A stretch of 64,000 bases of DNA, taken from contig CM068769.1 of NCBI GenBank assembly GCA_035084275.1, forward strand, positions 248,001-312,000, read 5' to 3'. The DNA is from Hydrolagus colliei. Taxonomy: Eukaryota. The translations under genes and the position numbers were made by a program. How positions within the stretch are numbered: the stretch's first letter is position 1; every line of letters starts with the position of its first letter. The notes beneath the pieces were generated by a model. The model had not been told where the DNA came from and did not search any database. It was given only the letters and a program-made list of their open reading frames with translations. Below, piece after piece: positions 1 to 57,229 of the stretch.

Positions 1-5
1 GCCTT

Positions 6-7712: not shown

Positions 7713-7753
7713 AATTTTTGTAGGGCGGAAGCACCGATCTGTGTATTACTGTG
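7713..7753 (-). other. Aberrant RSS of V segment D: CACAGTA-25-ACAAAAATT
   Basis: Spacer 7722-7746 is 25 nt versus 23 in paralogs B and G. Confidence 0.8.
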
Positions 7754-11607: not shown

Positions 11608-11639
11608 CCGCCACCTGGTGGACATGTGCCTGTACAGCG
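11608..11639 (-). promoter_or_regulatory. CTCF site, near-consensus
   Basis: CGCTGTAC-10nt-CCACCAGGTGGCGG. Confidence 0.75.
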
Positions 11640-19380: not shown

Positions 19381-20472
19381 ATGTTTTTTACAGGTCTTTC
19401 TTAAACACACAACACTGCTATCTGCACAGAAGTAAGTGGCGGAGTCAGACACTCCCACATCTCTGATCGTTAACGTGCAATCTTTTTCTACAGTTAAAGC
19501 ATTTATCCTCTGTTTTGCCTTCTCTCTTGATCCCAACACCAAGAAAATGATGTAGCCGTTTCCATACTGTTTGTACCATTGGAAGTATGGGATAGATGCA
19601 GTGCTTCTGCAATCTATAGTTGCATTCCCATTTTCATTCGCTGTCAGAGCCTGAGGTCTCTGTGACACTTCGCTTTCAGCTGAGACGCCTGGGGAAAAGA
19701 AATGAACATTCTTGAATAGTCAATCGCAAAATATCCGCAATAAGATAAAACATTTTTTTTATCAGGAATACCAAAATGTCCTTTTGTCCAATCTGATGTT
19801 CTACTTACACAAGAGTGACATCATTAATTTAACAATAATATATGGTGCATTGTACTCCAGCTTCATTCTCAAGTCTCTTCTATTCACGTCAAGATTTCTG
19901 ATTGATGTACAGCTAAAAGCTGATAAATGTTTGTGGAACGCAGTTAACTGTGCAAACTATATATTTGATCTCGGTTAATCCTTCATACACTTCATGTATA
20001 CTTGTTTCTGCTGAATTAATTCGCCAATTGGCTTGCGAAAAAGTTACACTGGCTGCTGTTTAGCTAATGCTTGCATGTATGTGGAGTGACCAAACCCACC
20101 CTGACTGAGTCCTAAGTACAGCGATAATTGTGGCATAATAATAATAATGAATCATTAATAATATTATTCATTATTAATAAAAATAATGAAATGCAAGGAA
20201 AAATAATCTTTGCATTTCATGTAGCGCTTTCCACATCTGCAAGTCATCAAAAAGCGCTTCAAGGAATCTAATGTAAAGTTAATTGACTGCATATTTGTGG
20301 GTTGAACGCGGTATCCAATTGCGCACAGCAGTGTCCCACAAACTGTCGTGAAATGAAATGACCAATTTATCATTGTTTTATTTGAAAGGTAATTTTTAGG
20401 CTTGCGTGTGGACGTAAGGAAACTTTCCCCAAATGTTCGCCCTGAAATGCCTAGATTCTAGCATCCTTATTC

Positions 20473-26657: not shown

Positions 26658-26984
26658 TGTTTTTGTACAGGCTCCTCTCCTCTGAGACACGCAGCACTGT
26701 GCTCTCTGCTGCACAGAAGTAAGTGGCGGTGTTTGTCATCCTCAGATCCCTGATTGTTAGTGTGCTGTTCTTCTCTTTTGTATCAGCCAAAGCACTTATC
26801 CTCTCCTCCACCTTGATCTCTCTGCTTCCCTTCAACAGCAAATCGATGGAGCCGTTTCCATACTGTTTGTACCATTGAAAGTAGTCTACGTTCAAAGCGG
26901 TGATGCAATCCATGGTTACATTTCCATTTTAATTCTCTTTAATTGATGGAGGTCTCTGTGACACTCCGCTTTCAGCGAAGACAC
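26658..26984 (-). pseudogene. TCR alpha-like V family 2b (segment H): V exon 26702-26984 with TAA at 26929-26931; RSS CACAGTG-28-ACAAAAACA; leader not identified
   Basis: GVFAESGVSQRPPSIKEN*NGNVTMDCITALNVDYFQWYKQYGNG...ATYFCAAE; spacer carries a GAGGA duplication. Confidence 0.88.
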
Positions 26985-28227
26985 CTGCGGCAATAGAAAT
27001 GAACATTCTTGGAAAGAATCTCGGAAAATATCTGCAACAACAAATCATAATTAGGTAATAAGTAAACAGGGATGTGTTTGTCCAAGCTCATACTCTACTT
27101 ACGGAAGAACAGAATCATTAAATTAAAAATGATATACAATGCGGTGAAACGAGGCTTCATTCTTAATAATCCACGTTGACTCGAGTGAAAATCTGTCTTT
27201 AAAATTAAACGGGAAGTCATGTAAAGGCTTATAAGCATTTATCAATGATTGTCGAATGTTTTTTTTAACTCTGCAGGATATGACTATATTCTGGGTAACG
27301 CCTTCACTGAAATATCACTTCCTGTATGTTGGGTTGTGCGGAATTCATTCGTTAATCGACTATCATCACGATTCTTATTTACTGCTGGTGAAACAGCGGC
27401 ATATTTGTGGATGAAGAAAACATACCCAATATTTTCCCCTGCTGGAGAGGTGACCTCCACAGCAACATCGAAATTACACGAAAATAGCGCCTTTGATATC
27501 GAAAGGACGTCCCAAGACGTTCAGCATCCTTGGTCGGGAACGGAGCAGGAGGGAAGGGTTGGGGTGAGAGCCGAGTAAAGGAGAGTAGAAGACGGGGAAG
27601 AGGTAGGAATGGGGGCAAAAGGCATGGTCGAAGTGGTAGCTCTTGAGAACGGCATTGAAGGGGGGAAATGAAGAAGCGAGGCGAAGGGAATGTGGGACTG
27701 AGTTCCAGAATGTGGCGGCAGAGAGGCTGAAACCCGGGTAACTGATGTTAGGGCGGTTCAGCGGGGACATAGAGCAGGCCAGAGCTCGCTGAACTGAGGT
27801 CACGTGCAGGCTGATAAACAGACGGCGGTTCAGAGATAGGCGGCGGGCAATGCCATGTGGGAGAAGAACACGAGCTGTCAAGACCACAGATCTTCTTAAG
27901 TGGCAAGCGCCTGAACCGATAAAGTACAGGATATCTCCTTCGTTGATTTCAAGTAAGCAGGGAAATAGATTGTAGATCCGACGGCCAACGGAATGCTGGC
28001 AGTAGAGGAATCGTGAAGGTCTCCCAGTTTTGTGCTGGTCTGCCCTTCAAACTCCTGCTGATGAGCCAGGTTGGGCTGCGTTCCATCAGCAGTGAGAACC
28101 CTAGACCTGGAAAGAATTATGTCAATGTGTTACCAAGCTACAGATCAGGTCTGGTCAGACATTCTGTTCTCCACTCAAGGAGGCAGGGGATTTACTTAGA
28201 ACACTGTGAGCAGTTACACGGCGCATC

Positions 28228-28260
28228 GTCACCATCTAGCGGTAGTAAAGCGGTACCTCA
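28228..28260 (-). promoter_or_regulatory. CTCF site
   Basis: TGAGGTAC-10nt-CCGCTAGATGGTGAC. Confidence 0.65.
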
Positions 28261-28928
28261 GGTTTGTATCGTTAGTTTGATCACACAGTCACAGAATCAT
28301 AGAATCATATAATCTTGCGGCAGAAAAGGAGGCCATTCGGCCCATCGAGACTACGCTGGCTCTTTGAAAAGAGCAATCCAATCCCACTTCTCACCACATT
28401 CTCCATAACTCTTCTAGCTATAACAGTAATACCTTTTAACGAATCCAGGCAGATCAGGGCGAAATCTTGGGCAAGTTTCCTTACTCCGTACGACTAATAT
28501 TAATGCTTCCAAAAATAAGCATAGCAATAAAATTGGTCATTTCAATCCACGCATTTTTGTGGGAGATTGCTGCGGGCAATTAGCTGCCGTATTTCTCACA
28601 CAAATATATATTCAATTCACTTGATTGTATGTTTTGTAAAGCGCTATAAGACTCAATAAGATGTGAAAAGCGCTATATCAAATGCACAGATTATGATTAT
28701 TTTATTATTATTATAACCGCACAAACCTGTCCTCCACAAATAACTGTCTGCCTGACATGTCTCGATCAGTAAACAGATTAGAGACCGTCGCGGGTAATTG
28801 GAAACTGTGAAGAATTCTGACAATGTGTTAGCAAGCTACACATCGGCTCTGGGCGTACTTTCTCTTTTCCGCTAACAGAGAACAAGAGATTTGAATGAGA
28901 AGACTGTGCTGAGGTACACAGTGCATCG

Positions 28929-28960
28929 CCGCCATCTGGCGTTAATAATTCGGGACAGAA
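28929..28960 (-). promoter_or_regulatory. CTCF-like site
   Basis: Core ACGCCAGATGGCGG. Confidence 0.5.
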
Positions 28961-29679
28961 GGTTTTTTATCGTTAATTTGAACACACAATAACTTACAGT
29001 AAATTATTGTACTCCACAAATGCACAAAATAATCAGGAGAGATATAGAAAAGGGATTTCGTTTCTCTGCTTGAAGGCTGTCTAGAATTTGATAGTGTAAT
29101 ACAGATCTGAGGCGTTAAGGAATAATAATAAACATTGCATTTGATATAACTGTTTCCACATCCTCTAGATATAGAATCTTATGGCACAAAAGGAGGCCAT
29201 TCGGCCCATCGAGTCTGTGACGGAAGATTCTGCAATCTGATGGGAAGCTCACGTAATTTACTCTAAAGTAAATTAGTTGTACATTTGTGAGTGAAATACG
29301 TATGAGAATTGCACATTTAAAAAAATGCACATTGCACATTGCACACAGTAGGGTCCCGCAAAGATTCGTGGAACGGAGAGAGAATTTATCTTTGTTTTTT
29401 TACAATGAATACAAGTAGTATCATTGGCTTCAATGGGGAAATGTTTAGTTACATAAAAACTGATAAGCAATGAAAATGTATTGGACATTGATAATACAAC
29501 ACGGATTTGATACTCAAAACGTGATTCTACATAATTGGGTCTCAATAAACGCAGATTTGTATGTGTTGTTCTTGCAAAATTAATAATATCTGAAGAAAAT
29601 TAAGTTGGAGCTGTGATACGACATTCAGCCACAGGGGAGGTGTTGTATTGTGAACACAAATTGGGAATGCAGTGCATCA

Positions 29680-29711
29680 CTGTCACCTGGTGGAGATACG
29701 ATTGTACTGCA
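29680..29711 (-). promoter_or_regulatory. CTCF site with perfect U motif
   Basis: TGCAGTAC-10nt-CCACCAGGTGACAG. Confidence 0.75.
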
Positions 29712-31384
29712 GACCATCGTGTCAATGCCTATCTGCCTGGATTTGGGAACCATTTAAATTGATAGACTAAGAATATCTAAACAAATCTCTGATGATTCTG
29801 TGCAATCCATCTCAATATGGGATTTTCCATCTATTAGAATGGAATGTGCTCTGTCTCTCGCTGGATCTATGCATCCTAACCATCCGATTACAGACGGTAT
29901 AAAATAAACTGACAAGACTTTGTGATGTTTAAATATGGATTACAAACATATAAATAAGCAAGTTTCTTTTGGGAGCACTGTCTCCCAAGGTTTCCCAGCG
30001 CTTCAACCTGGAATGCCCAAACTAAAATCACCCAACTTCGGGGTAGAAATCGCGGCTCTTTTCGGACTTATTTGGCAACAAAATCAGCGTTATGGAATTC
30101 TACAACAACGCAACAGACAATTACACCGGATACATTTGTTCGAATGCAGAGAGGTCAGGGCGAATCCTTGGGCAAGTTTCCTTGCTCGAAACGCATAATA
30201 ATAATCCGTCAAAGAAAAACCACAATTAAAAAAACGGTAATTTCAATCCACGACTGTTTGTGGGACACTGTTGAGCGCAATTGGCTGTCGCGATTCGCCC
30301 ACAGATTTATAGTCAATTCCCTTTACAGGATATTTTGTGACGCACTTGTAGGACGGTGATATGATGTGAAAAACGCTCTATTAACTGCATGAATTATTAT
30401 TATTAGTTAGATTTATTGTGCCTTTGTTGGTGCCGTGAAATATCAGCCAATTATCCCTCAAGATTTCATCAGGTTTCATCAGAATCCGCAAATGACCTGG
30501 TCAAGTAACAGATGTTTCCCTGTACTTTGGATTGTGGTGGTGGTGGAGGATGGGGGGCAGTGTCAATAATGTGTTGGGAGGGCTGTGTAATAGTTGATGC
30601 GCAAGGGAGTGGTATGAAGTGTGTGTACACGGAGGACGTTGTTCGCATTGTCCCTTTGACTCACACGTTCTCACTCCTTTTGCCATGCTGGTTTAGCCAC
30701 AATGGAAATCGCCAATGTTGGACCTTGATTGGAGTTCGTGAAACTTCCACAAAAAATGAACTGAGACAAGTTCCATGCAGCAAAATTTAATCAAAATAAT
30801 TGAACGCCCATACATAATATAGTACATCAAATCAGCGGAATGCTTACGTCAGGTTAGTAAAGTTTATGGCAATAGGTTTGAGCGTGTTAGTATAGTGGCT
30901 TTACAGCAGGAATCGATAGGGCACGGTTCCCATCAACCGATTGTGATTTAACAATACAGCCCAATATATCAACTGTTAACACAGCAACAACCGTGATGAA
31001 CACATTCTTAGTTCTGATCAATGCAATTCAGAGGCAAACGCATGTTCATTTATTCTGAACCCTTCTTCTAAAGTTATACCAACTAAACTGCAACAAACAT
31101 CATGTTAAATGTGGAATTCAGATTATTCGGAAAAAACTAACACGGATCATTCATGTGCAGACTCGGTTGTGATAAGCAACATTCGCCTTGTCAACAAAAC
31201 AATTTCTGAACAGGATTGTCATTCCAAAGGTCAGTTAACTAACATAAGCATTTCTGTCTGAGCGAACATTATATTTTAAGCGAGGGGTGTCGAATCTTTT
31301 GGCTGCTCCCAGTCCGTTTTCGTATTTGGGAAATGTCACATGAGCCAAAATCTTTGTGTTCCCCTTCCAGAAAAAAATAGTTAC

Positions 31385-31585
31385 ACAAAGGTGGTGGAGG
31401 CTGATTCGATAACAACTTTTAAAAGAGAATTAGATCTTTATTTAGGGAGAACAGGTCTATTAGGCTATGGGGAGCGGGCAGGGCAGTGGGATTGAATCGC
31501 TCTTTTCAAAGAGCCGGCACAGAGTAGATGGGCCGAATGGCCTCCTTTTGTGCCGTAAAATTCTATGAATCTATGAATCTATGAA
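31385..31585 (+). mobile_element. CR1 3' terminal fragment
   Basis: Matches 1500-1700, including the ATTCTATG-like tail. Confidence 0.85.
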
Positions 31586-32224
31586 ATCCTTTTCAGATTG
31601 AAAGGATTGCTTAAAATGCTCGTAACTACCTGCTGGGCAGCAAGGCTGGGAGTGGGAGCGCTATGGTGTGGGGTGGGGAGGGATTAAGATGACTGAAAGC
31701 GGATTGAAGCAGTTATACTTGATGAATGGTCATGGACATAAAACATTTGCGAATCAACGGCATTGCACATTTGTTGGTCAGGTCGGATGGGGGGATCGGG
31801 AGAAGAATAGAATGGATCGTGGCATATAACAAGAGTTTGGGTAGATCCAGGAGACCGGTCTGAACACCCAATCTATCTCAATTCTTCTCCATCATTCTGC
31901 GTCTCTCCTGCACGATATTAGTCAGAATCTCTCTCCCTCTTTCTCTCTCTTTCGCACATCCTGCACAGTCCCACTTTCTCATAGAGTGCCTTCAACTTTG
32001 TTATTTTTCTCTCACTCAATCTCTGTCTCTCGCACACAGTCTCTATCTCTCCGTTTCTCTTTCACCCTACCTCACTTAGTCTCAGTCATGCTCAGCTGAT
32101 CTTTGTCAGAGAAACAATTGATGGAATCTGCTAATTGTGGTCAGACTGAAGCTGGTATCTATGGCATGTGTCCATGGGAGTTAGAGAAAGTAGAATGAGC
32201 ACTTTGTGGCCAGTGGACTCACAG

Positions 32225-32329
32225 CTACACCCTGACTGCGGCGTACACTGTACCATCGTCAGGAGCGGTTTTGCGGCGATTGTCAATCCGGTTTCCTAAC
32301 GTCAGACTGGCGTAGTTGACATCAGAATC
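32225..32329 (-). CDS. Receptor gene 1, exon 10 (last): ITIM + ITSM
   Basis: Acceptor ttttcgcag|; DSDVNYASLTLGNRIDNRRKTAPDDGTVYAAVRV*; 105 nt, phase 0; conserved in the paralog. Confidence 0.88.
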   Translation of the reverse strand, partial: DSDVNYASLTLGNRIDNRRKTAPDDGTVYAAVRV

Positions 32330-33091
32330 CTGCGAAAAGGACGTCAGTCAACCCACTTGCTTAGGGTTTCAGTGGGAAAACCCAAAGCCCACCCTCACCC
32401 ATGTTGGGATGCCAAGCCATAGCACCTGTATATGTGTGAGCGATTTGTGCCTGTTTGTGTATATGGGCATTTGGGCTTGAACCTCCACCCTTTGAAATTC
32501 CATATCTCTGTCGCTTTGCCTTGCCTCCTACAAGTACATTATGAAGACCCATCTCTACGACCATTCCATCGTCCACCGTGTTACTATGAAGCGCTCTTAG
32601 ACGCCGTCCGACGTGGAGGGCGTTATATCAATCGAAGTTGTTGATACCCCTACTCTTCCTGCATTCTGGGTCTATACACCCAGTAAGTGTCACACACGTA
32701 CACACGCAGACATTTGAGGTCGTGCGAACTGCTGGCAGTGCCGTAAAGTGTTCAACAGATGCTGTTGGAACTTGAGAAACGAACGCAGCAGCCAAATTAT
32801 GCACAGCATCGTCACACAAACACATTCCGTCTCCCCCCAAAACTCTCTTCTGCCTGAGGCAATAGTGCTGCTGGCTGAGTTTGACTGAGCCGGGCTCTGA
32901 GCTGAGCTGTGCCAGCCTGATTGACACAAGGCACATGCTTGGCTCGCGCAAAATTTAATTGATGGTGACATAGGACGTGAATTCTGCTGAGCGAGGAGCC
33001 AACTGAGACTTACAGTAAGGCTGAGCTGAGCTGCATCTAAGCTCACACTGAGCCTGAACCAACGTAAAGCAATGATTCTGTCTCTACTCAC

Positions 33092-33132
33092 CACTGGAGG
33101 CACCAAGCTTGGAACGATTCTCACTGAAGCAT
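33092..33132 (-). CDS. Receptor gene 1, exon 9 (cytoplasmic)
   Basis: tttcag|AT GCT TCA GTG...CCA GTG|GTGAGT; 41 nt, phase 1 to 0; same length in the paralog. Confidence 0.85.
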
Positions 33133-33917
33133 CTGAAACAAAAACAAACAGTGTAGAGTACTAGCATATTACAGTTAAACTCAACGTTATTCAATATCAT
33201 TGTTAATCTTATAAGTAAGTACATTCTGTAATTAAAGACGAAAGTGACAATAATAATCATTTGACAAATAATAGTGTACTTGCAATTTTGGCACTGAATT
33301 TAACTGACTTGTCATTTTGTCGAGACATCCCAAAGAGTTTCATAAGGTACGCCGTTTAATGCAGTTATTGTTCGTATTGTGAGTGACTCATATCATATAG
33401 TTTGGGCACAACAGTGAGCCACAGAAAAGCAAGGTGAATGACATATTTTATTCATTTAGTGGACACCTATAAAAATTCTATTGCCTTTGTGAACAGTGAC
33501 TCCAGATGTCGAATGTGAAACTAAAGAGCCAGACGGGCACTCGCTTTCACATCTCATCTGAAGGGCAGAACACTTGAAGTGGGTGAAATTAATTCAGACG
33601 GTCAGACACACATTGAGACACATGGTCAGATACACAGTTAGACACATGGACAGACACACAATCAGACATGCAAACGGACAAACACACTTGTAGACACTCA
33701 CTCAAACACTCACACACATATACAAACGGATAGTCGCAGATCTTCAGCGAGTGGCAGCACCAGAGAAAGGTTAAGAGAACAATGGCCTCTAGCCAGACAG
33801 AAGATCATGAACAATCGATCGCGTTCTGTGGGATTAAGTTACATGGCTGACTACGCGCCTGTATGTGACCAGTTTTGTTTTCCCTCTGCGATCAAATCAA
33901 GGAAATCTCTCACTCAC

Positions 33918-33961
33918 ATGTGACGTTGCTGGATTCTGGGCCGCCTCTCTCAGGTAAATTC
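33918..33961 (-). CDS. Receptor gene 1, exon 8 (cytoplasmic)
   Basis: cccccag|G AAT TTA CCT...GTC ACA T|GTGAGT; 44 nt, phase 2 to 1; same length in the paralog. Confidence 0.85.
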
Positions 33962-35118
33962 CTGGGGGAAATAAGAACATAGAGTGATGAATTCACTGCT
34001 GCTGTAATAAACAGGACCACAGATCTGAGGCCTGGCCTTTTAATAGAGGTCACAAGCAACTATTTTGTCTAGTCTTGGGGAAATAACAGGGAAATCGTAA
34101 TCAGAGGATTGCTTTTGAAAGAGGAGAACAGGTACGAGGCAACGAATGGTAATAGCTGCTTTATCGCTGTATTTGTTGCTTTAGTTGGAAAATGGAAGAA
34201 GCATGGTGGTGTTCATTGCAAAATCTAATTTCACAACACAGCACTTACCTAACTTCGAGACAGTAAATAAAATATACGAGTTTCTGTTTTTCTGTGTGAT
34301 GGAGCCCGGTGACATGACGGTGTGTTTGCAGTTGGGTGGAGTGGTGAGGAGCTGATCTGTACACAGTGTTTACCTAGACTTGCATGACTTCACTTTTTGA
34401 TTATTTAAGGTGGGGATAGAGGGTAACATGATAACAGGGGTAGACAATTCTTGTCTTATAATGTGTTCCCCTAATTTGATAATTTGATCATTAAATTTGT
34501 GCGGGGTGGTGGGTGAAGTTGGGGACGGGGGTGGTAGAGAGGTTGCGGGGGTTTGCGGGGAGCTGTGTGGTAGGTCCAAGTCAGGTGTGTGCCTCGTGTG
34601 AAAACCCATTACGGTGGTGACATGCTCGAGTCACACGTGCTACAATTGGCAAATTCCTGCGTTTGTTATGATTATACAACAACAAATTAACAAATTACAC
34701 TTATAAAGGATACAGTATCTCTGCAACCCTATGCACCGTTAGAATAAGGCACGGTGTGAGAAGAGGCAGTGTGTATTTGCTCCCAATTGTGCATAGGCAT
34801 AACTGTTTCGGTCTCACCAGCCGAAACCTCACAGCTTTAAGGCAGAAACTATGTCTGGCAAGATTTATAGCGATTAAGAATTACGACAAGACCACCGTTG
34901 AGGGCTTTGTCTTGCAGAAATAACTGAACATCAGTGAAAGGAATCCAGTGTCTCCTTTGTCATCCCACTCTTGGTGAATAGTGACAGAGCGAAAACCAGC
35001 ACGATGAGGTGAGTTGTGCGACGTAAATGGGATAAGAGTTTCGAAGTACAGTGAAGGGGCGAGCAACAATATATGTAAGATGGATAGAGAGCAGAGTTTA
35101 GAGTAGAAGTATTCGTAC

Positions 35119-35146
35119 CTTTCTCCACTTGGACTGTTCTTTTTAG
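35119..35146 (-). CDS. Receptor gene 1, exon 7 (28-nt cytoplasmic micro-exon)
   Basis: CTGAC branch, ttcttgcag|CT AAA AAG AAC AGT CCA AGT GGA GAA AG|GTACG; phase 1 to 2 exactly bridges the TM exon and exon 8. Confidence 0.75.
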
Positions 35147-35713
35147 CTGCAAGAACAAAATGTAATAAAAATGAAACATTGGTCAGTACTTACGTATATT
35201 CGTGTGGTTTTATTAATAGCTATATTCCATTTGAGCCAGGGTCAAAGCCTGAAATGGTGACTATGTATCTTGGGAATGAAATACATCAACTAATTAGCTT
35301 ACTAATGTGTCCCAGAAATTACTATTAATTTAGTGACCAACAAAATGGGTGGAATTGTTAGCCAGGACAACTGGGAGAGAGAAATTCCCATCTCTTTTCG
35401 AATCGAGCCAAAGCATGTTTAACTTCAACATGAACCGTTAGACGGGACCTCGGTTTGTAAGTCTCACCAATGCTATCGACCGAAGGATTGAACATTCAAG
35501 CAACACTGTCATACCACAGCAGCTTCAAAACATTGACTATTCTATATAACTGCAAGTTGTTGTCGTATTGGTGCATCTCTGTTCTCATGCTCTGTTCTCT
35601 GGTGTTTCTCTGAAACACCAGAGCAACCATACAAAGTGATTAACGGCACCGCTGGCTCCAACTTGATTCCGAGCAATTCTATTCTACACTCAGAGATATT
35701 AGTAGACAATTAC

Positions 35714-35812
35714 CTCTCCTATACAGACAGATGGCCAGGAAAATCACAGCGATCACTATCACAGTGACAATTCCAGCAGCAAGTCCTGAAATGCGTATAC
35801 CTATCCACTTTC
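35714..35812 (-). CDS. Receptor gene 1, exon 6 (transmembrane)
   Basis: Polypyrimidine...ctctctag|; GKWIGIRISGLAAGIVTVIVIAVIFLAICLYRR; G|GTAATT; 99 nt, phase 1-1. Confidence 0.9.
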
Positions 35813-36235
35813 CTAGAGAGGAAAAGGGAAAAACAGCAATTGTAAGAGCTAACAAAGACGGAAATTCATGATTTTGCTATGGTTCAATATCAGCTGCTGT
35901 ACAACAGCTCGATCTGGGGTCAGCAAACCTTGTATCACAAAGAAAAATTACATCGTATATTGGTGAGGATTAGGTCGTATACTGAACCCCTCCTTTGCGG
36001 AAAGCAGAGAGAATTAATACCCGGACATACCGTTAGGCTATCGTTCGTGAATTTCGATTTGGAAACTGTTTTATCATGCGATGTTTTTTCGTCCTTAGGG
36101 TTAGGGTTAGGATTGGGGGTTAGAGTTTGGGATCAAACAGGGCAAACACCATGACATTACATAAAAATACCAGGAGCTCTCATAAATTTCTAAAACAGAA
36201 ACAAGTAATTGTTTGAAATTTTATTCAGCACTTAC

Positions 36236-36520
36236 CTGGTACAGTGATTCGCACTCGCTCGCTCTCTGGTGATGTGAATTCTCGTCCGCCTATGTTTGTT
36301 GTATATTGACACGAGTAATTTCCTATTTGGGTCGCCGATTGGTTGAATGTAGCCGTGTTGTTTTTCTCTGGAGCCAGCTGTGATGTGACAAACTCGCCGT
36401 CTCTGTATAAAGAGAAATTGCTGCCAGGATGATTCCCAGCACACGAGATCTCAGTGTGTTCTCCTCTCACTAGCACATGGGAATATGGCTTCAAAGAAAT
36501 GTTTGGCTTCGGAAGTGGAT
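36236..36520 (-). CDS. Receptor gene 1, exon 5 (Ig domain 2, C2-like, LRC/FcR type)
   Basis: DPLPKPNISLKPYSHVLVRGEHTEISCAGNHPGSNFSLYRDGEF...GNYSCQYTT...SPESERVRITVP; 285 nt, phase 1-1. Confidence 0.92.
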
Positions 36521-38163
36521 CTGGAATTGATACACATTAAAGATAATCTCATAAACGGTCGCTGTGATCGGTGGTGGTGTGAGAGTCAACATCAGCACCG
36601 ACAATGAGCCCAGCACCAGCCTGTGAAACTGCTTGTGTCTGAGGTTTAGGTAGAGGCAGACATGTGCACTTTGTCTCAATACCAGGAATCAGCAGCTTTC
36701 CAAAGTGTTCTACTTCAGATTGGGTATCTGCCTGGCTCAACGACTCATACTCTCCTCTCTGAATCAGAGAGTTCTGGGTTCAAAATGCATGTCAGAGACT
36801 TTCAGCCAACAATAAAGGCTGACTCTGCAGTACCGCGCTGGGGGAGAGTAGGATAATAGACTTTGGGGGAGATTTAAAATGAAAATTCTGGCCACATCCT
36901 GTTCAGGCAGATATTAAGCATCCCGCAGCTCTCTTTGAAACAGAATAGTATTTCGACTAGCTGTCGTGATCAACAATGCTTCAGACAAAATGGGAACTTT
37001 GGAAAGTCAGGTCCAGGCGAATGATTTTACGGCCCTTTTTGTCAGCTTTATATCTCTCCACAGTAACTCCCCCACACGTCGTTTGTGACCTCCAGTAAAC
37101 CCGCATCTCCGCCCCCACTCCCCCCCTCCCTCAGCACAACTGCCTTCACTCAGACCTGGTCCACATCGCGCCATCGTCCACTACAGCACTAAATTCTCCT
37201 CCCCACCCTTCCGACTCCATTATACCCAGTCCGGCTTCTAGCCACTTAGCCACTTTAGAAGTCCAACAGGTAGACCCTCTGACTACATACTTTTCTCCAC
37301 TCTTTCAAGGCCTGACTCAACGTCTACCTTTTCGCCACACTTTGGAAATAGTTTGACTGCCTTCCACAGCAATTCAACCCAGCTCCCCGGCTCCAGCCTG
37401 ACACAATGTCCAGCCGCAATGCCCAGCTAGGTCACAAGGCCTGGAGTGTTTCACACTTTGGGATATCCATGAGGGGAAAGGAAAATTTGGGATTTGATAG
37501 TAATTTACTGCGTCACCGCTGGTAGTACGTTGCCTTGAATCGCAGGTGAAATATGTTGTTATTGTGTGAAATTGATGTCATAGTTGCCAAGAAATAATAG
37601 TCCCCTCTATTGAAGCGTTTTTCTTACATACAGTATTATCGCTATTTGGATCACTAAGGTTATGCGAAAATTTGTTTCAAGTAATTCCACGTTGATGGAA
37701 GAAAATGACCCATTTCGCATCATTTGCGGCAATAAATATACGGTCTGATTACTGGGTGGGTGGTAACGTTGGCAATGATTGTTTGCCACACACTTCTCTG
37801 TTTGTCCAGCATTAGTTAACAACATGTTTGGTAGTTGAACGGTAAATTCTTTTCCTGGAGGTTAACAATCCCTCCAAAATAGTAGCAGTATGGTCACCAG
37901 CTCCACCCTGTTGAGTGCGATGAGCAACTAGCTGCCGCATTCCACTCACAAATATATATTCAATACACGTTGAGATTTGAAATAATTTCAGTCGTCTCTT
38001 CAAAGTGCTATGAACTGCAAGCATTATCCTTGCACCACCACCAACAACAAAATTATGTACACGTGTATAGCGCCTTTCACGTCAAATTCAAACTCATCAA
38101 AACATAATTAGGTGAGTGAATGAGAATTTAGAAGTTGGAAAGCCTTCAGGCTCTCGCTCTTAC

Positions 38164-38448
38164 CCAGCAGGGAGACTTCCACTCGCTTGCTCTCTGGTGA
38201 TGCGTGGTCTCGGCTCTCTACGTGTGTAGTATATTTACACCAGTAGCTCCCTGTACTGATCTCTGATGCGATGAACGTGGCCTTGGTTTCATTCTCTGGA
38301 GATGGCTGTGATGTAATAAATTGATCGTTTCTATAGAAAGAAAAATTGCTGCCAAGGTGATTCCCAGAACACGAGATCTCAGCTATTTCTCCCCGCACAA
38401 ACACCGGGAAATCCGGCTTCAGGTGTATAGTGGGTTTCTGCAGTGAAC
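38164..38448 (-). CDS. Receptor gene 1, exon 4 (Ig domain 1, C2-like, LRC/FcR type)
   Basis: GSLQKPTIHLKPDFPVFVRGEIAEISCSGNHLGSNFSFYRNDQF...GSYWCKYTT...SPESKRVEVSLL; 285 nt, phase 1-1. Confidence 0.92.
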
Positions 38449-39229
38449 CTGGAATTAAAGCAACAAAAATAATATCACGACTACTCGCTCTGATCTGTGC
38501 TGTGAAACTGAAAATCATGATCTTCAACGACCGTCTGTTTGATTGTTTCTGCCTAAGGTTTATTAAGAGGTAGAATTGTGCACTGTATTTAAACCTCGGT
38601 CAGTGTGAGTTGTGGTCAGGATCAGCTCGGGGGTGAGAGTGAGCTGGGGCACAGTGTGATTTGCCGACCTGTGTGAGCAGGAAGCTGGTGTAAACTGGTT
38701 TACAGTGTGAGCTGGAGGGCTGTGTGACCCGGAAGAGATTCCCTGCTGGGGATCATTGTGTCCTGCGGATATGTGACTGTTCTGGGTTGCGGTCACATCC
38801 CCACCGTTAACTGGCTCAGAGTCAGACACTGCACTTGTTAAGCACTCTTAGATGCTACACGGCTTGGAGGGCGCTATTTAATTCTATGTTGTCGCTGTTG
38901 TTCATCGGCCCAAGCATTGTACTGAGCCTCTCCCGAACCGCTCAGCCTCGCACACAGTCACCCCCATCATCTCATCGCTTTCATCCTGCATTGAAACCCA
39001 TCCAATTGTCTCCTCTCTTCCCACGTTGGTCTTCTCCATCCCTCCCTCAGTCCTAATCCCTCCCCATGTAATCTGCCAACCACGAGACCTCAGCCCCTCC
39101 CCCATTTCTCACGACCTCCTACTGTGATCAGCGTTGGCATGGTGGTCTGCCTCACCACTGTATACACTATTCTCAGCCCGTTCCTCTGTGATCACGCACG
39201 CCTCATCGATATAGTCACTCTGTGTACGA

Positions 39230-39660
39230 CAACAACAGCTTCGATTTATATAGCGCTATCACGCCGGACGGCGTCTCAGAGCGCTTCAGAATAGCGGATC
39301 CCGGGACCGAGTCTGGGGCAGGGGCAGAAAGGTGACCAAAAGCGCGCTGGAAGAGAAAGGTCTTCAGCTGTGACCTGAAACTCGGAAGAGAGGGGGCGAG
39401 GCGAAGGGAGTGTGGAAGGAAGTTCCAGACCCTCCCGGTGTAGCGACTGAAGGCAGGTCGCCGAGGGTGCGGCGGAGGATTCGGAGAACATGGATGAGGC
39501 CAGACCCAGAGGAGCGCAGGCAGCGGGTGCTGGGTGGGGGGAGAAGAGATCATAGAGATAGGCGAGTGAAGGGATTTGAAAACAAGGGTGATGATCTTGA
39601 AGTCGATCCTCTGTGGGATAGTGAGGCAGTGAAGTCTGGCATGGACTGGAATAATGGGGG
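39230..39660 (-). mobile_element. L2 3'-end fragment or L2-derived SINE in a receptor intron (similar pieces near 6690-7160, 21900-22300, 27470-27880, 43490-43880, 50700-51130, 54250-54540)
   Basis: Shared tail gagacgccgtccggcgtg...gcgctatataaatcgaagct; boundaries approximate. Confidence 0.7.
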
Positions 39661-39852
39661 AGCGAAGTTGAAGGTTGGAGTGTACTCACTCGCCCTTTTG
39701 GTCCCGTCTCTGTTCAAACCCCTGCAGTCATAACACTCTGTGTTCACAATGCATAATGTATGCACTGTGCGCCCCATCCAGTGCTCATCACCCTCCGTGC
39801 CTCCACCCCACCCCGAGTGAACGAGACAATGATCAGACACTGAGTTACTTAC

Positions 39853-40161
39853 CTGAGCAGATGACGGCGGCATCATTGTCGTGTGTTGCGGGATAGTGAC
39901 TCCAGGGATGTGAGGGACATTCCCTCAGAGTAGACTCATTGCCTCTGCACTGAACATCAAAAGTCACAATGGGAGCTATTGCTTTCCCAAAGTGAGCTCC
40001 TCCTGGTATTGACATTGCCTCTCCACAGCCCAGCTCCTTACACACCACTGCTACGTCCTTCATATCCCAGTCAGAGTCAAACACTCTCCCCCATATTCCA
40101 TCGTGGTAAACCTCCACTCTCCCAGCACACGTGATGCTTCCATTCGCCAGTCTCACTCTCC
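39853..40161 (-). CDS. Receptor gene 1, exon 3 (single-exon SRCR domain)
   Basis: GRVRLANGSITCAGRVEVYHDGIWGRVFDSDWDMKDVAVVCKELGCG...DVQCRGNESTLRECP...DAAVICS; 309 nt, phase 1-1, G|GTAAGT. Confidence 0.95.
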
Positions 40162-41972
40162 CTGTAACACATCATACAAATATCATAATAGTCTTTCCTC
40201 GTTGTCATAAACTCAACCAAGATTCAACAGATGCGTATTGTCTATTGTCCACAACAGATAGACATTTGTTTTGGGAGGACGGATTTATGCGGTTATGGGG
40301 AGAGAACTGGAGAATGGGATTGAATTGATCGTTTCAAAGAGCTGGCACAGCCTCTATGGGAAGAATGGCCTCCTTTTGTGCCGAAAGATACTATGATTCC
40401 ATAATTCTAATAAAGTGTACATGTGCCTGAAACACGGGAGGGTGTCTGCGGTATTAACTATACAGCAATGATAATAATAACTATAATGGTGGCAGTGAAT
40501 GATGGAGACATACAATGCAAATTATGAGTGTCCCAATGACAGATACAGTTTATTCCATGGCGAGCTACGCCCGTTTCAGCTACGTTTGCAACAAAATGAT
40601 ATATCATGGAATAAATATTTCAGTGTTTGTATACTTTATGTTATGTTAGGATACTTTATTTTGTAATACTTTATAATATTTTATGATACTTTACGTATCA
40701 TAGTATTTTATAGTCGGTTAGTCAGCTTCATAATTGATTGTTATATTTTATATTGTGTCTTTTATATATTATCATAAATTATAGTTCCTTATCATAATGC
40801 ATATTATGTTAGATTATTGTACTTTATAATATTATGCTTTATGTTACATGTAAGGCCAAAACAAACGTAGAATTTGTCACATGAATTCAGGACTCTTTGT
40901 GTCATACAGACTGATGCGCGCCATTGGCTGCAACACTTTACCCGAAAATAATGCAGGCAATAAACTTTAAAGCATACTGTGTGAAGCGCTTAGAAATATC
41001 TAGCAGACACAGAAGCACTAAATCAAATTGATGGAATAATATATGTTAGTACATTTTACGAAATTGTACTAAATATGATATGATTACACTTGATAATAAA
41101 TTTTATCCTTTTTGTTAAATTATTATGTTGTTATTAGATTACTATATGTTAGACAACGATAGGATATGCCGTACAAATATACACCAGTGCTTTTGTAATT
41201 TGCTACACAAAATATTAGTTAGATGTATCGCTCTACAAAGGTATATGTTTGTTTTTAAAAAACATTACGTTGCAGAATAGCATATTTTGCAGATTAATGT
41301 AATATTATAAAATATAGCTGATCAAACACATGAGATCCCAGAAGCCAAATATGACCTTAACATTTTTTTTAGGAAGACGTTTCCGCTATGGTGTATATTA
41401 AACTCTTAAGTCAGGTATTCCGTTATTGGCAAATCCACAGATACACACACAATGCCAATTTATTAGTTTAATTTTATCAGGTAACAGCTCGGGTTTGTTC
41501 GTTAAGGGCAAGTTACATGGTGTATGTGCAAACACAGAGAGATAGATATTGAACAGTGCAACCTGACAGAGTTCACAATCCCACAGCACAGCGATTTGAG
41601 AGCTAATCTCTACTGGGGGCAGCGCTGTGCCTACACCATACATAGGACACCAGTCAAACTCGACACTCTCCACCATCCTCCCATGTACAACTCAACAAAC
41701 ACCTTCTTTGAACCCAGACGTATGTATAGTAGCCACGGCTATTAGAAAAACGTCAACTTGCGTTGAAGCAGGCAGCTAAGGATTACAAGATGGAGGGAAA
41801 GAGAAAGAGTATTCCATAGGTTTGAAACGTTGTGACTGAAAGCGCAGCCGCCGATGAGAGAATAACTGGGCAAGAGGGACACAATGTGAAACTTTACTAA
41901 CATGGTTTGTTCATTATGTGACTGTTTGATTCCCCACTCCCCATATATCGATAAAGAGAGGCCGAGACTCAC

Positions 41973-42029
41973 CCTCATGAGCTAAAGTTGCAGCAGTGGC
42001 TTTCATCATCATCATCTCTAGAGATATCA
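41973..42029 (-). CDS. Receptor gene 1, exon 2 (second half of the signal peptide)
   Basis: ttccccttgtgcag|TG ATA TCT CTA GAG ATG ATG ATG ATG AAA GCC ACT GCT GCA ACT TTA GCT CAT GAG G|GTGAGT; 57 nt, phase 1-1. Confidence 0.78.
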
Positions 42030-42644
42030 CTGCACAAGGGGAAAAACAAATACATCAGGTGGAAGTATGAATCCGATAAGGATATTAAAGCATTGGAAAT
42101 GGTGCGGAAGAGATTTTCCACGATGGTATCAGCAATCAGGAACTTCAGTTATGTCTACTCAGCTATTCAGCTTTCAACTCCGCCCCTCAATCATCTATTG
42201 CTTTACTCTCACGCTCGATTCCCAATCTTCTTTCTTTCCTTAACAACAAGCCAAAATTATAGTTAGCAGTGCATTCCACAGCAACAGGACGTCCTGTGGT
42301 GGACGGCGGGAGATTTGCACCAGAGCTGGTGGTTGATTTCAGGACAGGTGGAAAGCAGAGAACGTAGGGCTAATAGGTTGGCAGAAGGCAGGGTTGAAGA
42401 AGAGCGTCTTGAGATGTCTCCTCATGGAGGCAAGCGAGGGTGCGAGATTCAGCGACTGTGGGATGGAGTGCTAGATGGTGGGCGCAGAGAAGCTGAAAGC
42501 CATCTCTTCTATAGTGGGGCGGTCAAAGTGGAGTTGCAGACAGGCAGAGTGGGCTACCGCAGCGATGTGAGGGTGAACGACAGTTGGAGGTCAAACATGA
42601 TGCTGAGAGATTGAATCAGTGATTGGGTTATTAACAGTACTCAC

Positions 42645-42693
42645 AGAATAGGAGAAGCATCTTGAGGATGGAGATGGACCTGTAAAGGGGCAT
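42645..42693 (-). CDS. Receptor gene 1, exon 1 coding part (ATG at 42660, or in-frame upstream ATG at 42693)
   Basis: (MPLYRSISILK)MLLLF+T|GTGAGT; joined to exon 2 gives MLLLFLISLEMMMMKATAA, a plausible signal peptide. Confidence 0.68.
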
Positions 42694-56170: not shown

Positions 56171-56451
56171 GTTATGTTCTTATTTTCTAACCTCATCGTA
56201 GTCAATGGGGGAAGTATTTATCTGCATAAAAAGGTGATAAAGAGTGAAGATGTATTGGACAATTATAAGACAACAATGAGGAAGTACTGAAAACGTGTTC
56301 CGACGTAATCGGCTAAACTAACCGGGATTGTTTGTGTGTTGGTCTTCAAAAAGTAATAATATCTGAAGTGAGTGAAGTTGTATCTGTAATATCGCATTCA
56401 GCCAATGGGGAGTTTTGGATTCGCTGCACAAGGAGGGAATAGAGTTCAACA

Positions 56452-56483
56452 CCGCCAACTGTTGGATATATGGTTCTAATGCA
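56452..56483 (-). promoter_or_regulatory. CTCF-like site (paralog of 11608 and 29680)
   Basis: TGCATTAG-10nt-CCAACAGTTGGCGG in homologous flanks. Confidence 0.5.
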
Positions 56484-57229
56484 CACCAAGCCTATCTGTC
56501 TGTCTCGTCTTCGGAACCATTTAAATTCGACCCCCACCCGCACCCCTCCTCCTCCACCCGAAACCTCATTCAGTGCGTTATTACTGTAATATATTGAGGA
56601 ACCAAGAAATTAGTAGTAAGATGCTCTACAGATTTTTAACTAATTACTTTTATTCCTGGTCCCGGCCGCAAGTGCATATGTATCATTCTGATTAAGGGTT
56701 TCCATGTTTGAAAAGCAACCGTGAATTTTGAGTTAGAGCAACAACACCGGGCAATTAATATAGCCCCGCTCGCGCATTGTAGACTCCCAGAGCTCGACAC
56801 TGTGGTGAAGGCTGTCGCTGAGCCAGCGTGGATGGGGTAAGGCAAACCCACCCCCACATTTATCCGCTCACTATTCTCACACTCGTCCACAGCCAGCCTC
56901 TCGCAATTTCGCCTATTTCCATGACATCTCAAACTTTCTATATTTGTATAAAATACGTGTAATTGTTAACTGCTTTATATTGTGCTCAATTTTGTATCAT
57001 GTTGGAACTCAAGCTATAAAGAGAATCCAACCTAATCCCTGATAATTCTGTGCAATCCGCCTAAACATGGGCTTTCCCATCTACTCCAATGCAATGTCCT
57101 CTTTCACTCGCTGGAAGTACGCATCTGAACTAACCAATCGCAGTGAGTATCATGGGTAAATTTGCAAGAATGCGCGATTGTGAAATCCTGGGTTTTATCA
57201 AACTAAATTCTAGTTTTCGCTATTGGGAA

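What the first reader, a model, noticed from the sequence alone, without database searches (positions are those of the whole stretch)
26658..42693. Inhibitory receptor cluster directly adjoins, and shares duplicated DNA with, a TCR alpha/delta V array
Seen: the receptor stop codon is about 5.2 kb from V segment H, on the same strand, and I found no V segment between 27 and 64 kb. The CTCF-bearing non-coding block upstream of the V cassettes also lies just 3' of both receptor genes. Established: the mammalian TRA/TRD 5' flank holds olfactory receptor and other genes, not LRC or SRCR receptors. Inference: either the 5' border of the chondrichthyan TCRAD locus abuts an NK-like/SRCR receptor family, which bears on primordial-immune-complex ideas, or the two were co-duplicated. 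The V array could alternatively be an orphon.
Basis: partly seen in the sequence, partly recalled or inferred. Interest (0 to 1): 0.7.

Follow-up and report, generated by a model that had tools for sequence, protein, structure and literature searches.

The report
Inhibitory receptor genes beside TCR V-array
In this chimaera-like fish genome, an intact gene for an inhibitory immune receptor (plus the tail of a second copy) sits about 5 kb upstream of eight mostly broken T-cell-receptor V segments; the junction is real and old, but 64 kb cannot show whether it is the edge of the true TCR alpha/delta locus.

Summary
Everything lies on the minus strand.

- **V array (1-27.2 kb):** eight V-set segments with a leader exon, V exon and RSS. 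They are TCR alpha/delta-like. Only V2, V3 and possibly V1 look usable. V5 to V8, nearest the receptor, are defective.
- **Receptor gene 1 (32,225-42,693):** a nine-exon, 414-aa open frame encoding SRCR, two LILR/KIR/OSCAR-type Ig domains, a TM segment and three tyrosine motifs. Every junction is AG/GT. Its stop lies 5.07 kb from the V8 leader ATG.
- **Receptor gene 2:** only the tail is in the window (61.2-62.9 kb).
- **No V segment lies at 27-64 kb.**
- **Shared DNA:** it is real and is not a transposon. Two collinear segmental duplications overlap in the spacer at 28.1-30.6 kb. One copies three V segments plus their upstream DNA; the other copies the receptor tail plus its 3' flank. The three copies of the ~1.1 kb block are equidistant (K2P about 0.40), so the adjacency is old and not a mis-join.
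- **CTCF:** the motif is perfect in one copy only and shows no special conservation.

Closest proteins are from Callorhinchus milii (61-70% identity). The window could not be placed in an assembly, so "5' border", "interleaved" and "orphon" all remain open. No open-access paper found describes this adjacency. Moderately interesting.

The parts
32225..42693 (-). Receptor gene 1, intact. Exons: 42693-42645 (leader), 40161-39853 (SRCR), 38448-38164 (Ig1), 36520-36236 (Ig2), 35812-35714 (TM), 35146-35119, 33961-33918, 33132-33092, 32329-32225 (stop TAG 32227-32225). Encodes 414 aa. Tyrosine motifs: VTYASV, VNYASL, TVYAAV.
   Evidence: Pfam: SRCR 3e-29; Ig_2/HIDE1-type Ig. Exon borders were read. 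Small exons were found by homology to C. milii P0009. The joined CDS is 1245 nt, open, and AG/GT at every junction. PDB hits are LILRB1/2, PIR-B, OSCAR, KIR3DL1 and FCRL5.
61184..64000 (-). Receptor gene 2, 3' part only. Cytoplasmic exons at about 62898-62854, 62119-62079 (YATVRRAPRSETPE) and 61288-61184 (ITYANL, IVYATV, then stop). The ectodomain exons lie beyond the window end.
   Evidence: tblastn with P0009; tblastx between gene 1 and gene 2; exon scan.
26658..27160 (-). It has an in-frame stop (IKEN*NGNV) and a 28-bp RSS spacer.
   Evidence: V-set 6e-11; translation; RSS.
22809..23200 (-). V7, family B, pseudogene. It is frameshifted before the DSAVYYC motif. Heptamer CACAGAG with a 23-bp spacer. 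A LINE fragment lies just upstream (23.3-24.9 kb).
19382..19866 (-). V6, family A. The V exon is open, but the RSS heptamer is destroyed (AGCAGTG) and the spacer is 22 bp.
9815..10316 (-). V5, family A, pseudogene. It has an in-frame stop (KVE*RIS). The RSS is canonical (heptamer plus 23-bp spacer).
7713..8100 (-). V4, family B. The V exon is open, but there is no leader ATG at the position used by V2, the heptamer is CACAGTA, and the spacer is 25 bp.
4843..5325 (-). V3, family A. The best functional candidate: open frame and canonical CACAGTG-23-ACAAGAACA RSS.
   Evidence: All 60 listed PDB hits are TCR chains, nearly all alpha, with one delta.
2754..3171 (-). V2, family B. Open frame, leader ATG at 3171, heptamer CACAGAA with a 23-bp spacer.
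1..400 (-). V1, family C. The V exon is open, but the conserved Trp is replaced (LLYRQ). The heptamer is at 12-6; the rest of the RSS is cut off by the window start.
28128..30625 (-). Intergenic spacer included in both duplications. It is collinear with V5-upstream (to 12644) and with the receptor-2 3' flank (to 54666).
29360..30006 (-). Block copy between receptor 1 and V8. It carries an internal deletion of about 500 bp. Degenerate CTCF-like motif CCACCAGGTGACAGT at 29679-29693.
11308..12413 (-). Block copy upstream of V5. Perfect CTCF core CCACCAGGTGGCGGT at 11607-11621.
56188..57263 (-). Block copy 3.9-5.0 kb 3' of the receptor-2 stop. Motif CCAACAGTTGGCGGT (2 mismatches) at 56451-56465. 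No V segment follows it.

Best explanation
This is a genuine and old junction between two tandemly duplicating immune gene families in a holocephalan (Callorhinchus-like) genome.

**Shown: the two families**
- Upstream lie head-to-tail genes for type I membrane receptors: one SRCR domain, two LILR/KIR/OSCAR-type Ig domains, an uncharged TM segment, and a tail with ITIM/ITSM-like tyrosines.
- Downstream, on the same strand, lies an array of TCR alpha/delta-type V segments (leader exon, V exon, 23-bp-type RSS). Most of them are pseudogenes.

**Shown: why DNA is shared**
- The 5 kb spacer between the last receptor gene and the first V segment was caught in two separate, roughly contemporaneous segmental duplications.
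- One copied [spacer + V-A, V-B, V-A]: 19.35-30.6 kb matches 4.8-12.6 kb.
- The other copied [receptor + spacer]: 28.1-34.0 kb matches 54.7-63.0 kb.
- Hence the same ~1.1 kb block now sits upstream of V5 and V8 and 3' of both receptor genes.

**Inferred: how the parts work**
- The receptors signal by tyrosine phosphorylation and SHP-type phosphatase recruitment, as inhibitory members of a paired activating/inhibitory family.
- Intact V segments (V3, V2) are joined by RAG to J or D segments further downstream.
- The shared block is mostly neutrally evolving spacer. Its single intact CTCF motif points towards the J/C side and could act as a V-side loop anchor, but nothing here shows constraint.
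- The adjacency is best read as the product of local duplication of a lineage-expanded receptor family at or inside the periphery of an alpha/delta-type V region. It is not evidence of primordial linkage.
For: - **Domains:**
- **Complete gene model:**
- **ITIM tail homologous to C. milii XP isoforms:**
- **V anatomy and RSS:**
- **Collinear multi-block duplications on both sides of the block:**
- **Three block copies equidistant, K2P 0.39-0.41:**
- **No gap in 4.4-49.9 kb:**
- **Block absent from about 147 kb of four C. milii paralogous loci, although SINEs and LINEs recur there:**
- **Activating-type paralogue with Arg in the TM (P0017):**
- **Receptor family on several C. milii scaffolds without nearby V segments:**
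Against: - The window could not be placed in any assembly. Contiguity with TRAJ/TRAC/TRDC, and what lies beyond 64 kb, are therefore unknown.
- Family B V segments score about as well against mammalian VH as against V-alpha in PDB.
- A second signal-peptide mini-exon, present in a C. milii paralogue, was not found.
- Expression and signalling are not tested.
- The age estimate rests on an assumed neutral rate.
Confidence: 0.6

Rival explanations
1. The junction is the true 5' border of the functional TRA/TRD locus, and it reflects ancestral linkage of LRC-type/SRCR receptors with antigen-receptor genes.
For: - The receptors are upstream of, and co-oriented with, the V segments, and no V segment lies in the 37 kb upstream.
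- The duplications are old.
- Cartilaginous fish keep Ig, TCR and other immune loci linked (PMC12227049, PMC3964593).
Against: - Only 64 kb is seen.
- TCR alpha/delta-type V exons are scattered among other clusters in elasmobranchs.
- The receptor family hits only C. milii among chondrichthyans, so it looks like a holocephalan expansion.
- Four paralogous loci have no V segment within 10 kb.
Confidence: 0.15
2. The eight V segments are an orphon or decaying satellite cluster. They were duplicated away from the working TRA/TRD locus into a receptor-rich region and are not used for TCR chains.
For: - Five or six of eight V segments are defective: stops in V5 and V8, a frameshift in V7, a lost heptamer in V6, and a 25-bp spacer with no leader ATG in V4.
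- All four V segments nearest the receptor are dead.
- The region is LINE- and SINE-rich.
Against: - V3 and V2 keep open frames, leaders and usable RSSs.
- V spacing and orientation are those of a normal translocon array that runs off the window.
- Pseudogene-rich distal V regions are common in genuine loci (established knowledge).
Confidence: 0.25
3. The adjacency is an assembly artefact: a chimeric join at a shared repeat between 27 and 32 kb.
For: - The receptor family sits on unplaced, repeat-rich scaffolds in C. milii.
- A shared block exists at the junction.
Against: - There is no N run in the interval.
- The block copies in the window are only 68-70% identical, too diverged to mislead an assembler.
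- Receptor-flank homology (34029-28128) and V-upstream homology (30625-26205) overlap by 2.5 kb.
- The receptor-2 flank independently continues into V-upstream-type sequence.
Confidence: 0.05
4. The shared block is a conserved regulatory element. It would be a CTCF insulator or loop anchor separating the receptor transcription units from the V array, or promoting V-to-J contacts, and is kept by selection in each duplicate.
For: - There is a perfect CTCF core at 11607-11621, in the same orientation as the genes.
- Homologous positions are retained in the other two copies.
- CTCF sites accompany V segments in mammalian antigen-receptor loci (established knowledge; PMC7515734 for Tcra).
Against: - The motif is degraded in two of three copies.
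- Only 11 of 15 motif columns are identical in all three. The motif window (17/25) is not the conservation peak. Overall three-way identity is 55%, as expected for neutral drift.
- Window-wide motif counts are at chance.
- Six of eight V segments have no such block.
Confidence: 0.2

Closest known systems
Mammalian TRA/TRD locus V region and its 5' flank
   Same: Co-oriented V segments, each with a leader exon, a V exon and a 23-bp-spacer RSS. Tandem duplication of multi-V units. Pseudogenes among the V segments. A non-TCR multigene family immediately upstream.
   Different: In mammals the upstream neighbours are olfactory-receptor and housekeeping genes (established knowledge). Here they are ITIM-bearing SRCR-Ig receptor genes. 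The pseudogene fraction here is much higher. Linkage to J/C genes is not shown.
Trypsinogen genes embedded in the mammalian TRB locus (established knowledge)
   Same: An unrelated, tandemly duplicated gene family sits inside or against a TCR V region and is co-duplicated with it.
   Different: Trypsinogens are not immune receptors. That arrangement is conserved across tetrapods, whereas conservation of this one is unknown.
LRC receptors (LILR, KIR, OSCAR, PIR-B) and FCRL
   Same: Ig domains of the same sequence type. Each domain is encoded by one phase-1 exon. The tail carries ITIMs split over small exons. Activating paralogues with a charged TM exist (P0017).
   Different: The membrane-distal domain is an SRCR domain. 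Genomic position relative to LRC framework genes is unknown. Ligands are unknown.
Group B SRCR receptors WC1/SCART1/CD163/DMBT1
   Same: A single-exon SRCR domain whose nearest named relatives are DMBT1-, WC1-, SCART1- and M130-like proteins.
   Different: There is only one SRCR domain. The cysteines corresponding to the C2-C7 pair are missing (read directly from the sequence; numbering from established knowledge). It is fused to Ig domains. The tail is inhibitory rather than of the WC1 type.
Callorhinchus milii automatically annotated SRCR-Ig proteins (e.g. P0009 'uncharacterized LOC103172721 X3', P0001 'alpha-1B-glycoprotein-like')
   Same: The same architecture and the same tail exons: KQKSSSGER / NVT|YATVRK / IIYANL...IYATVRV.
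   Different: Identity is only 48-61%. No identical protein is on record. The neighbourhood of those genes (four loci) shows no V segments.
Elasmobranch antigen-receptor complex (Flajnik et al. 2025, PMC12227049)
   Same: TCR alpha/delta-type V exons lie in a region shared with other immune gene clusters. Some V segments are intermediate between TCR and Ig types (compare family B here).
   Different: The neighbours described there are IgH, IgL and UrIg2, not SRCR or LRC-type receptors. SRCR, LRC and natural killer are not mentioned in that paper.

Membership tests
TCR alpha/delta V gene segments (TRAV/TRDV) | V-set Ig domain with the conserved Cys, Trp and Y-x-C residues | tested here: met
   Seven V-exon ORFs were scanned in Pfam: six pass the V-set cut-off (4e-12 to 2e-10) and frameshifted V7 falls just below it (24.5 vs 26 bits). 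V5 is placed by alignment with V8 and its translation. V1 lacks the conserved Trp (LLYRQ).
TCR alpha/delta V gene segments (TRAV/TRDV) | Split leader: a leader exon, a short intron, then the V exon | tested here: met
   Family A leaders MK..., with a GTAAGT donor about 55 nt after the ATG, are seen for V3, V5, V6 and V8. V2 has a leader ATG at 3171. V4 and V7 lack that ATG.
TCR alpha/delta V gene segments (TRAV/TRDV) | RSS with a 23-bp spacer directly 3' of the V exon | tested here: met
   The spacer is 23 bp in V2, V3, V5 and V7. It is 25 bp in V4, 22 bp with a broken heptamer in V6, and 28 bp in V8. V1 is cut off. A 23-bp RSS does not by itself separate alpha/delta from beta, gamma, VH or lambda.
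TCR alpha/delta V gene segments (TRAV/TRDV) | Closest sequence relatives are V-alpha/V-delta rather than Ig or V-beta/V-gamma | tested here: inconclusive
   Family A: all 60 listed PDB hits are TCR chains, nearly all alpha, with one delta. Family B: the only named database hits are TCR alpha, but in PDB VH domains score as well as V-alpha because of a VH-like FR3. Family C: mixed.
TCR alpha/delta V gene segments (TRAV/TRDV) | Physical linkage to TRAJ/TRAC or TRDD/TRDJ/TRDC, and use in TCR transcripts | not testable with these tools
   No J or C gene lies in the window. The assembly could not be reached. No transcript resource is available.
LRC-type inhibitory Ig receptors (LILR/KIR/OSCAR-like) | C2-type Ig domains of the LRC/FcR sequence family | tested here: met
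   PDB hits: FCRL5 3e-16, LILRB2 2e-10, LILRB1, PIR-B, OSCAR, KIR3DL1. Pfam: Ig_2 and HIDE1-type Ig.
LRC-type inhibitory Ig receptors (LILR/KIR/OSCAR-like) | Cytoplasmic ITIM ([SIVL]xYxx[ILV]) with an uncharged TM | tested here: met
   VTYASV and VNYASL, plus the ITSM-like TVYAAV. The TM segment GLAAGIVTVIVIAVIFLAICLY has no charged residue.
LRC-type inhibitory Ig receptors (LILR/KIR/OSCAR-like) | Location in the LRC syntenic region | not testable with these tools
   No framework genes lie in the window, and the C. milii paralogues are on unplaced scaffolds.
Group B SRCR domain | Single-exon domain of about 100 aa matching the SRCR profile | tested here: met
   PF00530 at 3e-29, covering model positions 2-100. 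The exon 40161-39853 is phase 1-1.
Group B SRCR domain | Eight conserved cysteines (four disulfides) | tested here: not met
   Only six cysteines are present. The positions of the C2-C7 pair read F (RVFDSDW) and no Cys before HDNDAAVICS (sequence; numbering from established knowledge). The C. milii paralogue P0001 shows the same loss.
CTCF-binding element | Match to the core motif CCASYAGRKGGCRSY | tested here: inconclusive
   There is one perfect site (11607-11621). The homologous sites have 1 and 2 mismatches. Window-wide counts are at chance: 2 observed vs 0.37 expected at <=1 mismatch (8 of 100 shuffles reach this), and 8 vs 4.6 at <=2 mismatches. There is no conservation peak at the motif.
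CTCF-binding element | CTCF occupancy in vivo | not testable with these tools
   This needs ChIP or CUT&RUN.
Transposable element (as an explanation of the shared block) | Many dispersed copies in both orientations, with homology ending at the element's ends | tested here: not met
   There are three copies, all in the same orientation. Homology continues collinearly beyond the block on both sides. There is no copy in about 147 kb of C. milii loci that do carry the window's SINEs and LINEs.

The most novel reading that the evidence does not exclude
In holocephalans, the alpha/delta-type V region is physically interleaved with an expanded family of paired SRCR/LRC-Ig receptors. On this reading the arrangement preserves an ancestral linkage between NK-like (LRC-type) receptor genes and rearranging antigen-receptor genes. 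It would add an LRC-like component to the proposed proto-MHC/antigen-receptor complex. An SRCR receptor, whose domain relatives WC1 and SCART are gamma-delta T-cell co-receptors, might then be co-regulated with TCR delta/alpha V segments.
Probability: 0.1. Interest if true: 0.8.

Novelty: new variant of a known kind. Interest (0 to 1): 0.45.

Why it matters
**If the junction lies in the bona fide TRA/TRD locus and recurs in other chimaeras, sharks or rays**
- It would give a concrete, checkable case of LRC-type or SRCR inhibitory receptor genes linked to an antigen-receptor locus in the oldest jawed-vertebrate lineage.
- That bears on ideas of a primordial immune gene complex.

**If it is lineage-specific, which I think more likely**
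- It is still a clean example of two immune multigene families expanding by overlapping segmental duplications across a shared spacer.
- It documents an undescribed receptor architecture: SRCR + 2 LRC-type Ig + ITIM tail, with activating counterparts. This family deserves naming and expression study in holocephalans.

Tried and rejected
1. **Placing the window in an assembly.** Exact-protein look-ups failed for C. milii isoforms P0009 and P0002 and for V protein P0045. They also failed for two LINE ORFs of the window itself. Flanks were chosen so that neither N run would be fetched. The species and chromosome stay unknown.
2. **Synteny in C. milii.** Four paralogous receptor loci were fetched: L001, L003, L004, L005, all on unplaced scaffolds MU2498xx/MU2499xx. 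They contain no V segment and no copy of the block. L002 is a dense V array of an unidentified assembly with no receptor exons.
3. **A V relic 3' of the receptor-2 block.** Homology to V8-upstream runs to about 54,666, then a LINE follows. There is no V-like coding sequence or RSS. The 'ATYIC' match at 51.3 kb is chance.
4. **A receptor relic upstream of V5 (12.6-19.3 kb).** None was found.
5. **The block as a transposon.** Rejected; see the membership test.
6. **The block as a constrained element.** No window exceeds what drift allows. The best is 22/25 at GGATTGCACAGAA..ATCAG.GATT, and the CTCF window scores 17/25.
7. **A full-length TCR chain using a family B V.** A length-padded search found no full-length TCR chain using a family B V.
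8. **A second signal-peptide mini-exon, as in the C. milii paralogue.** Not found.
9. **Other genes.** The window has no Rfam hit, and ten intergenic ORFs between 30 and 57 kb have no Pfam domain; a separate scan identified the LINE reverse-transcriptase ORFs.
10. **Literature.** No open-access paper was found that describes SRCR-Ig/ITIM receptors in chimaeras, or such genes beside TCR V segments. The supplement of the elephant-shark genome paper is not held.

Full report
**What the window is**

The 64 kb is vertebrate DNA of about 43% GC with two N runs (4296-4430 and 49874-50033), which I left untouched. It is rich in LINE reverse-transcriptase fragments and a SINE of about 270 bp. All features relevant to the finding are on the minus strand. 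On that strand, high coordinates are upstream.

The closest proteins to both gene families come from the elephant shark Callorhinchus milii. Identity is 61% for the receptor and 70% for a V segment. No shark or ray protein appears among the receptor hits. The source is therefore a holocephalan, but no identical protein is on record and the exact species or assembly could not be determined.

**The V array (1-27.2 kb)**

Stop-to-stop ORFs and Pfam identify V-set exons; with V5, recognised by its alignment to V8, there are eight. They fall into three families by self-alignment:
- Family A: V3, V5, V6, V8.
- Family B: V2, V4, V7.
- Family C: V1.

Family A members have a leader exon (MK..., GTAAGT donor) about 100-150 bp upstream of the V exon. 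Each V segment ends in Y-x-C followed within 1-11 nt by an RSS.

| V | Family | Coding state | RSS |
|---|---|---|---|
| V1 | C | Open, but lacks the conserved Trp | Cut by the window edge |
| V2 | B | Open | CACAGAA-23-ACAAAAACT |
| V3 | A | Open | CACAGTG-23-ACAAGAACA |
| V4 | B | Open, but lacks the leader ATG that V2 uses | 25-bp spacer |
| V5 | A | In-frame stop | 23-bp spacer |
| V6 | A | Open | Heptamer lost |
| V7 | B | Frameshifted | 23-bp spacer |
| V8 | A | In-frame stop | 28-bp spacer |

At most three of the eight look usable, and the four nearest the receptor are all defective.

Evidence on V type:
- Family A hits only TCR chains in PDB, nearly all alpha plus one delta.
- The only named database relatives of family B are TCR alpha V regions.
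- Family B also has a VH-like FR3 (YADF..RFS..DK...DSAVYYCA). Because of this, VH domains score as well as V-alpha in PDB.
This is a lead, not a test.

I accept 'TCR alpha/delta-type V segments'. Family B is possibly of the intermediate TCR/Ig kind reported in elasmobranchs (PMC12227049).

**The receptor genes**

One SRCR exon (Pfam 3e-29) and two Ig exons were found at 39.9-40.2, 38.2-38.4 and 36.2-36.5 kb. A TM exon lies at 35.7-35.8 kb.

Four small cytoplasmic exons were located by homology with the C. milii isoform P0009 and with the second gene copy. The DNA just upstream of it is homologous to the corresponding region of a C. milii paralogue.

Joined, the nine exons give a 1245-nt open frame of 414 aa, with AG/GT at every junction. 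The order is signal, SRCR, Ig, Ig, uncharged TM, then a tail with VTYASV, VNYASL and TVYAAV.

The Ig pair hits FCRL5, LILRB1/2, PIR-B, OSCAR and KIR3DL1 in PDB. The SRCR domain has six cysteines rather than the eight of group B.

A second gene is represented only by its last three exons: 62898-62854, 62119-62079 and 61288-61184, the last carrying ITYANL and IVYATV. Its ectodomain lies beyond 64 kb. 'Cluster' therefore means one complete gene plus one tail.

C. milii has many paralogues on separate scaffolds. They include forms with an Arg in the TM (P0017) and even a PRY/SPRY fusion model (P0014). This is a paired-receptor-type expansion.

**The junction**

The stop TAG at 32227-32225 lies 5,065 bp upstream of the V8 leader ATG at 27160. 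There is no N between them. No V-like coding sequence or credible RSS exists between 27 and 64 kb.

**The shared DNA**

Self-alignment shows more than a single shared block.
- The segment [V3, V4, V5 + upstream] at 4812-12644 is collinear with [V6, V7, V8 + upstream] at 19351-30625. A LINE insertion at 23.3-24.9 kb interrupts the second segment.
- Independently, the receptor-1 tail and 3' flank (34029-28128) are collinear, in nine to eleven ordered blocks, with the receptor-2 tail and flank (62968-54666).

The two duplications overlap in 28128-30625. This is why a block of about 1.1 kb occurs three times, always in the same orientation: at 11308-12413, at 29360-30006 (with an internal deletion of about 500 bp), and at 56188-57263.

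The three copies are mutually equidistant (68-70% identity; K2P 0.39-0.41). The two duplications are therefore of similar and considerable age.

The block is absent from about 147 kb of four C. milii paralogous loci, although those loci share the window's SINEs and LINEs. Its homology also extends beyond its ends in each pair. It is therefore not a transposon.

These facts argue strongly against a chimeric join at 27-32 kb. The receptor-2 flank, a separate copy, also runs from a receptor tail into V-upstream-type sequence, although no V segment follows it. A LINE occupies 52.8-54.3 kb there.

**The CTCF claim**

The core motif CCASYAGRKGGCRSY is matched perfectly once, at 11607-11621 on the minus strand (CCACCAGGTGGCGGT). 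The homologous positions have one mismatch (29679-29693) and two mismatches (56451-56465).
- With <=1 mismatch, the window has 2 sites against 0.37 expected, and 8 of 100 shuffles do as well.
- With <=2 mismatches, it has 8 sites against 4.6 expected.
- The motif is not a conservation peak in the three-way alignment: 11 of 15 columns are identical, against a 55% background.
- Six of the eight V segments have no such block.

A regulatory role is possible, but the sequence does not support it.

**Interpretation**

Shown:
- Two immune multigene families are contiguous and co-oriented.
- They have duplicated across a common spacer.

Inferred from family knowledge:
- The receptors are inhibitory, with ITIM and SHP recruitment.
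- The intact V segments recombine by RAG to downstream J or D segments.

Not shown:
- That this is the 5' border of the TRA/TRD locus.
- That the V segments are used.
- That the linkage is ancestral.

Points on each side of that question:
- Elasmobranch data show alpha/delta-type V exons scattered among IgH clusters, so a V-free stretch is not a border.
- The heavy pseudogene load fits either a decaying distal part of the V region or an orphon.
- The receptor family looks holocephalan-specific and sits on many scaffolds without V segments. This favours local, lineage-specific duplication over primordial linkage.

My confidences are about 0.6 for 'real, old junction created and propagated by local segmental duplication', 0.25 for orphon, 0.15 for ancestral border, and 0.05 for misassembly.

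**Comparison with known systems and novelty**

- The V array behaves like any translocon V region.
- A foreign gene family against or inside a TCR locus has precedents: olfactory-receptor genes 5' of TRA, and trypsinogens in TRB (established knowledge).
- The receptor combines LRC-type Ig domains and an ITIM tail with an SRCR head. That architecture exists only as automatic annotations in C. milii. I found no description of it in the searchable literature.
- The adjacency to TCR V segments is likewise undescribed there. SRCR, LRC and natural killer do not occur in PMC12227049.

I rate this a new variant of known kinds, with moderate interest (0.45). The decisive work is chromosome placement, synteny and transcript use, none of which could be done with these tools.

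Noticed in passing
window 7713-8100, 2754-3171, 22809-23200 (family B V segments): Family B V segments combine a TRAV-like FR2 (LFWYRQYPN..PE.IL) with a VH-like FR3 (YADF.NKRFS..VDK...DSAVYYCA). In PDB they score as well against VH domains as against V-alpha. They may be of the 'intermediate' TCR/Ig V type, or VH-delta/TAILV-like, as reported near shark TCR alpha/delta loci.
   Followed up: partly
window 15716-16780 (tandem array 16126-16684, + strand): A GC-rich minisatellite of 20-22 bp units (CACACAGTCACTGCCCCGCC, about 27 copies) lies between the two V duplication units. Each unit contains a heptamer-like CACAGTC. GC skew there is -0.35.
   Followed up: no
window 39853-40161 (SRCR exon); also C. 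milii P0001: The SRCR domain has six cysteines. The pair corresponding to C2-C7 of group B domains is missing, both here and in the C. milii paralogue. This family therefore carries a distinct three-disulfide variant encoded by a single exon.
   Followed up: partly
window 820-1697 (+) vs 23314-24191 (-); also 31387-31585 and 59595-60311: Very young LINE 3' fragments are present: 96-97% identical to each other, against at most about 75% to copies in the sampled C. milii loci. One inverted pair brackets V2-V7. Others sit in the 3' flanks of both receptor genes, at non-homologous positions. This indicates recent retrotransposition into the region, and perhaps a species other than C. milii.
   Followed up: partly
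L005 (C. milii MU249886.1), protein P0014: One annotated C. milii paralogue model fuses SRCR-Ig-Ig to a PRY/SPRY (B30.2) domain and is named 'TRIM17-like'. It is either a real chimeric receptor or a gene-model fusion of neighbours.
   Followed up: no
L001 19430-19470 vs window 42645-42693: The C. milii paralogue has a two-exon signal peptide: MKTFVVLLL | VIFLEGKTGECAESVN. No counterpart of the second mini-exon was found in the window gene, although splicing the leader directly to the SRCR exon stays in frame.
   Followed up: yes
window 11500-11530 / 29590-29620 / 56330-56360 (alignment A1, columns 254-278): The best-conserved stretch of the shared block is GGATTGCACAGAA..ATCAG.GATT (22 of 25 columns identical in all three copies), not the CTCF motif. 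It is not clearly beyond chance.
   Followed up: partly
L002 (GCA_977066275.1, contig CDRUPQ010000519.1, 379822-400232): This is a very dense array of at least 15 TRAV-like V exons in 20 kb, from an assembly whose organism is not given. They are about 45% identical to family B.
   Followed up: no
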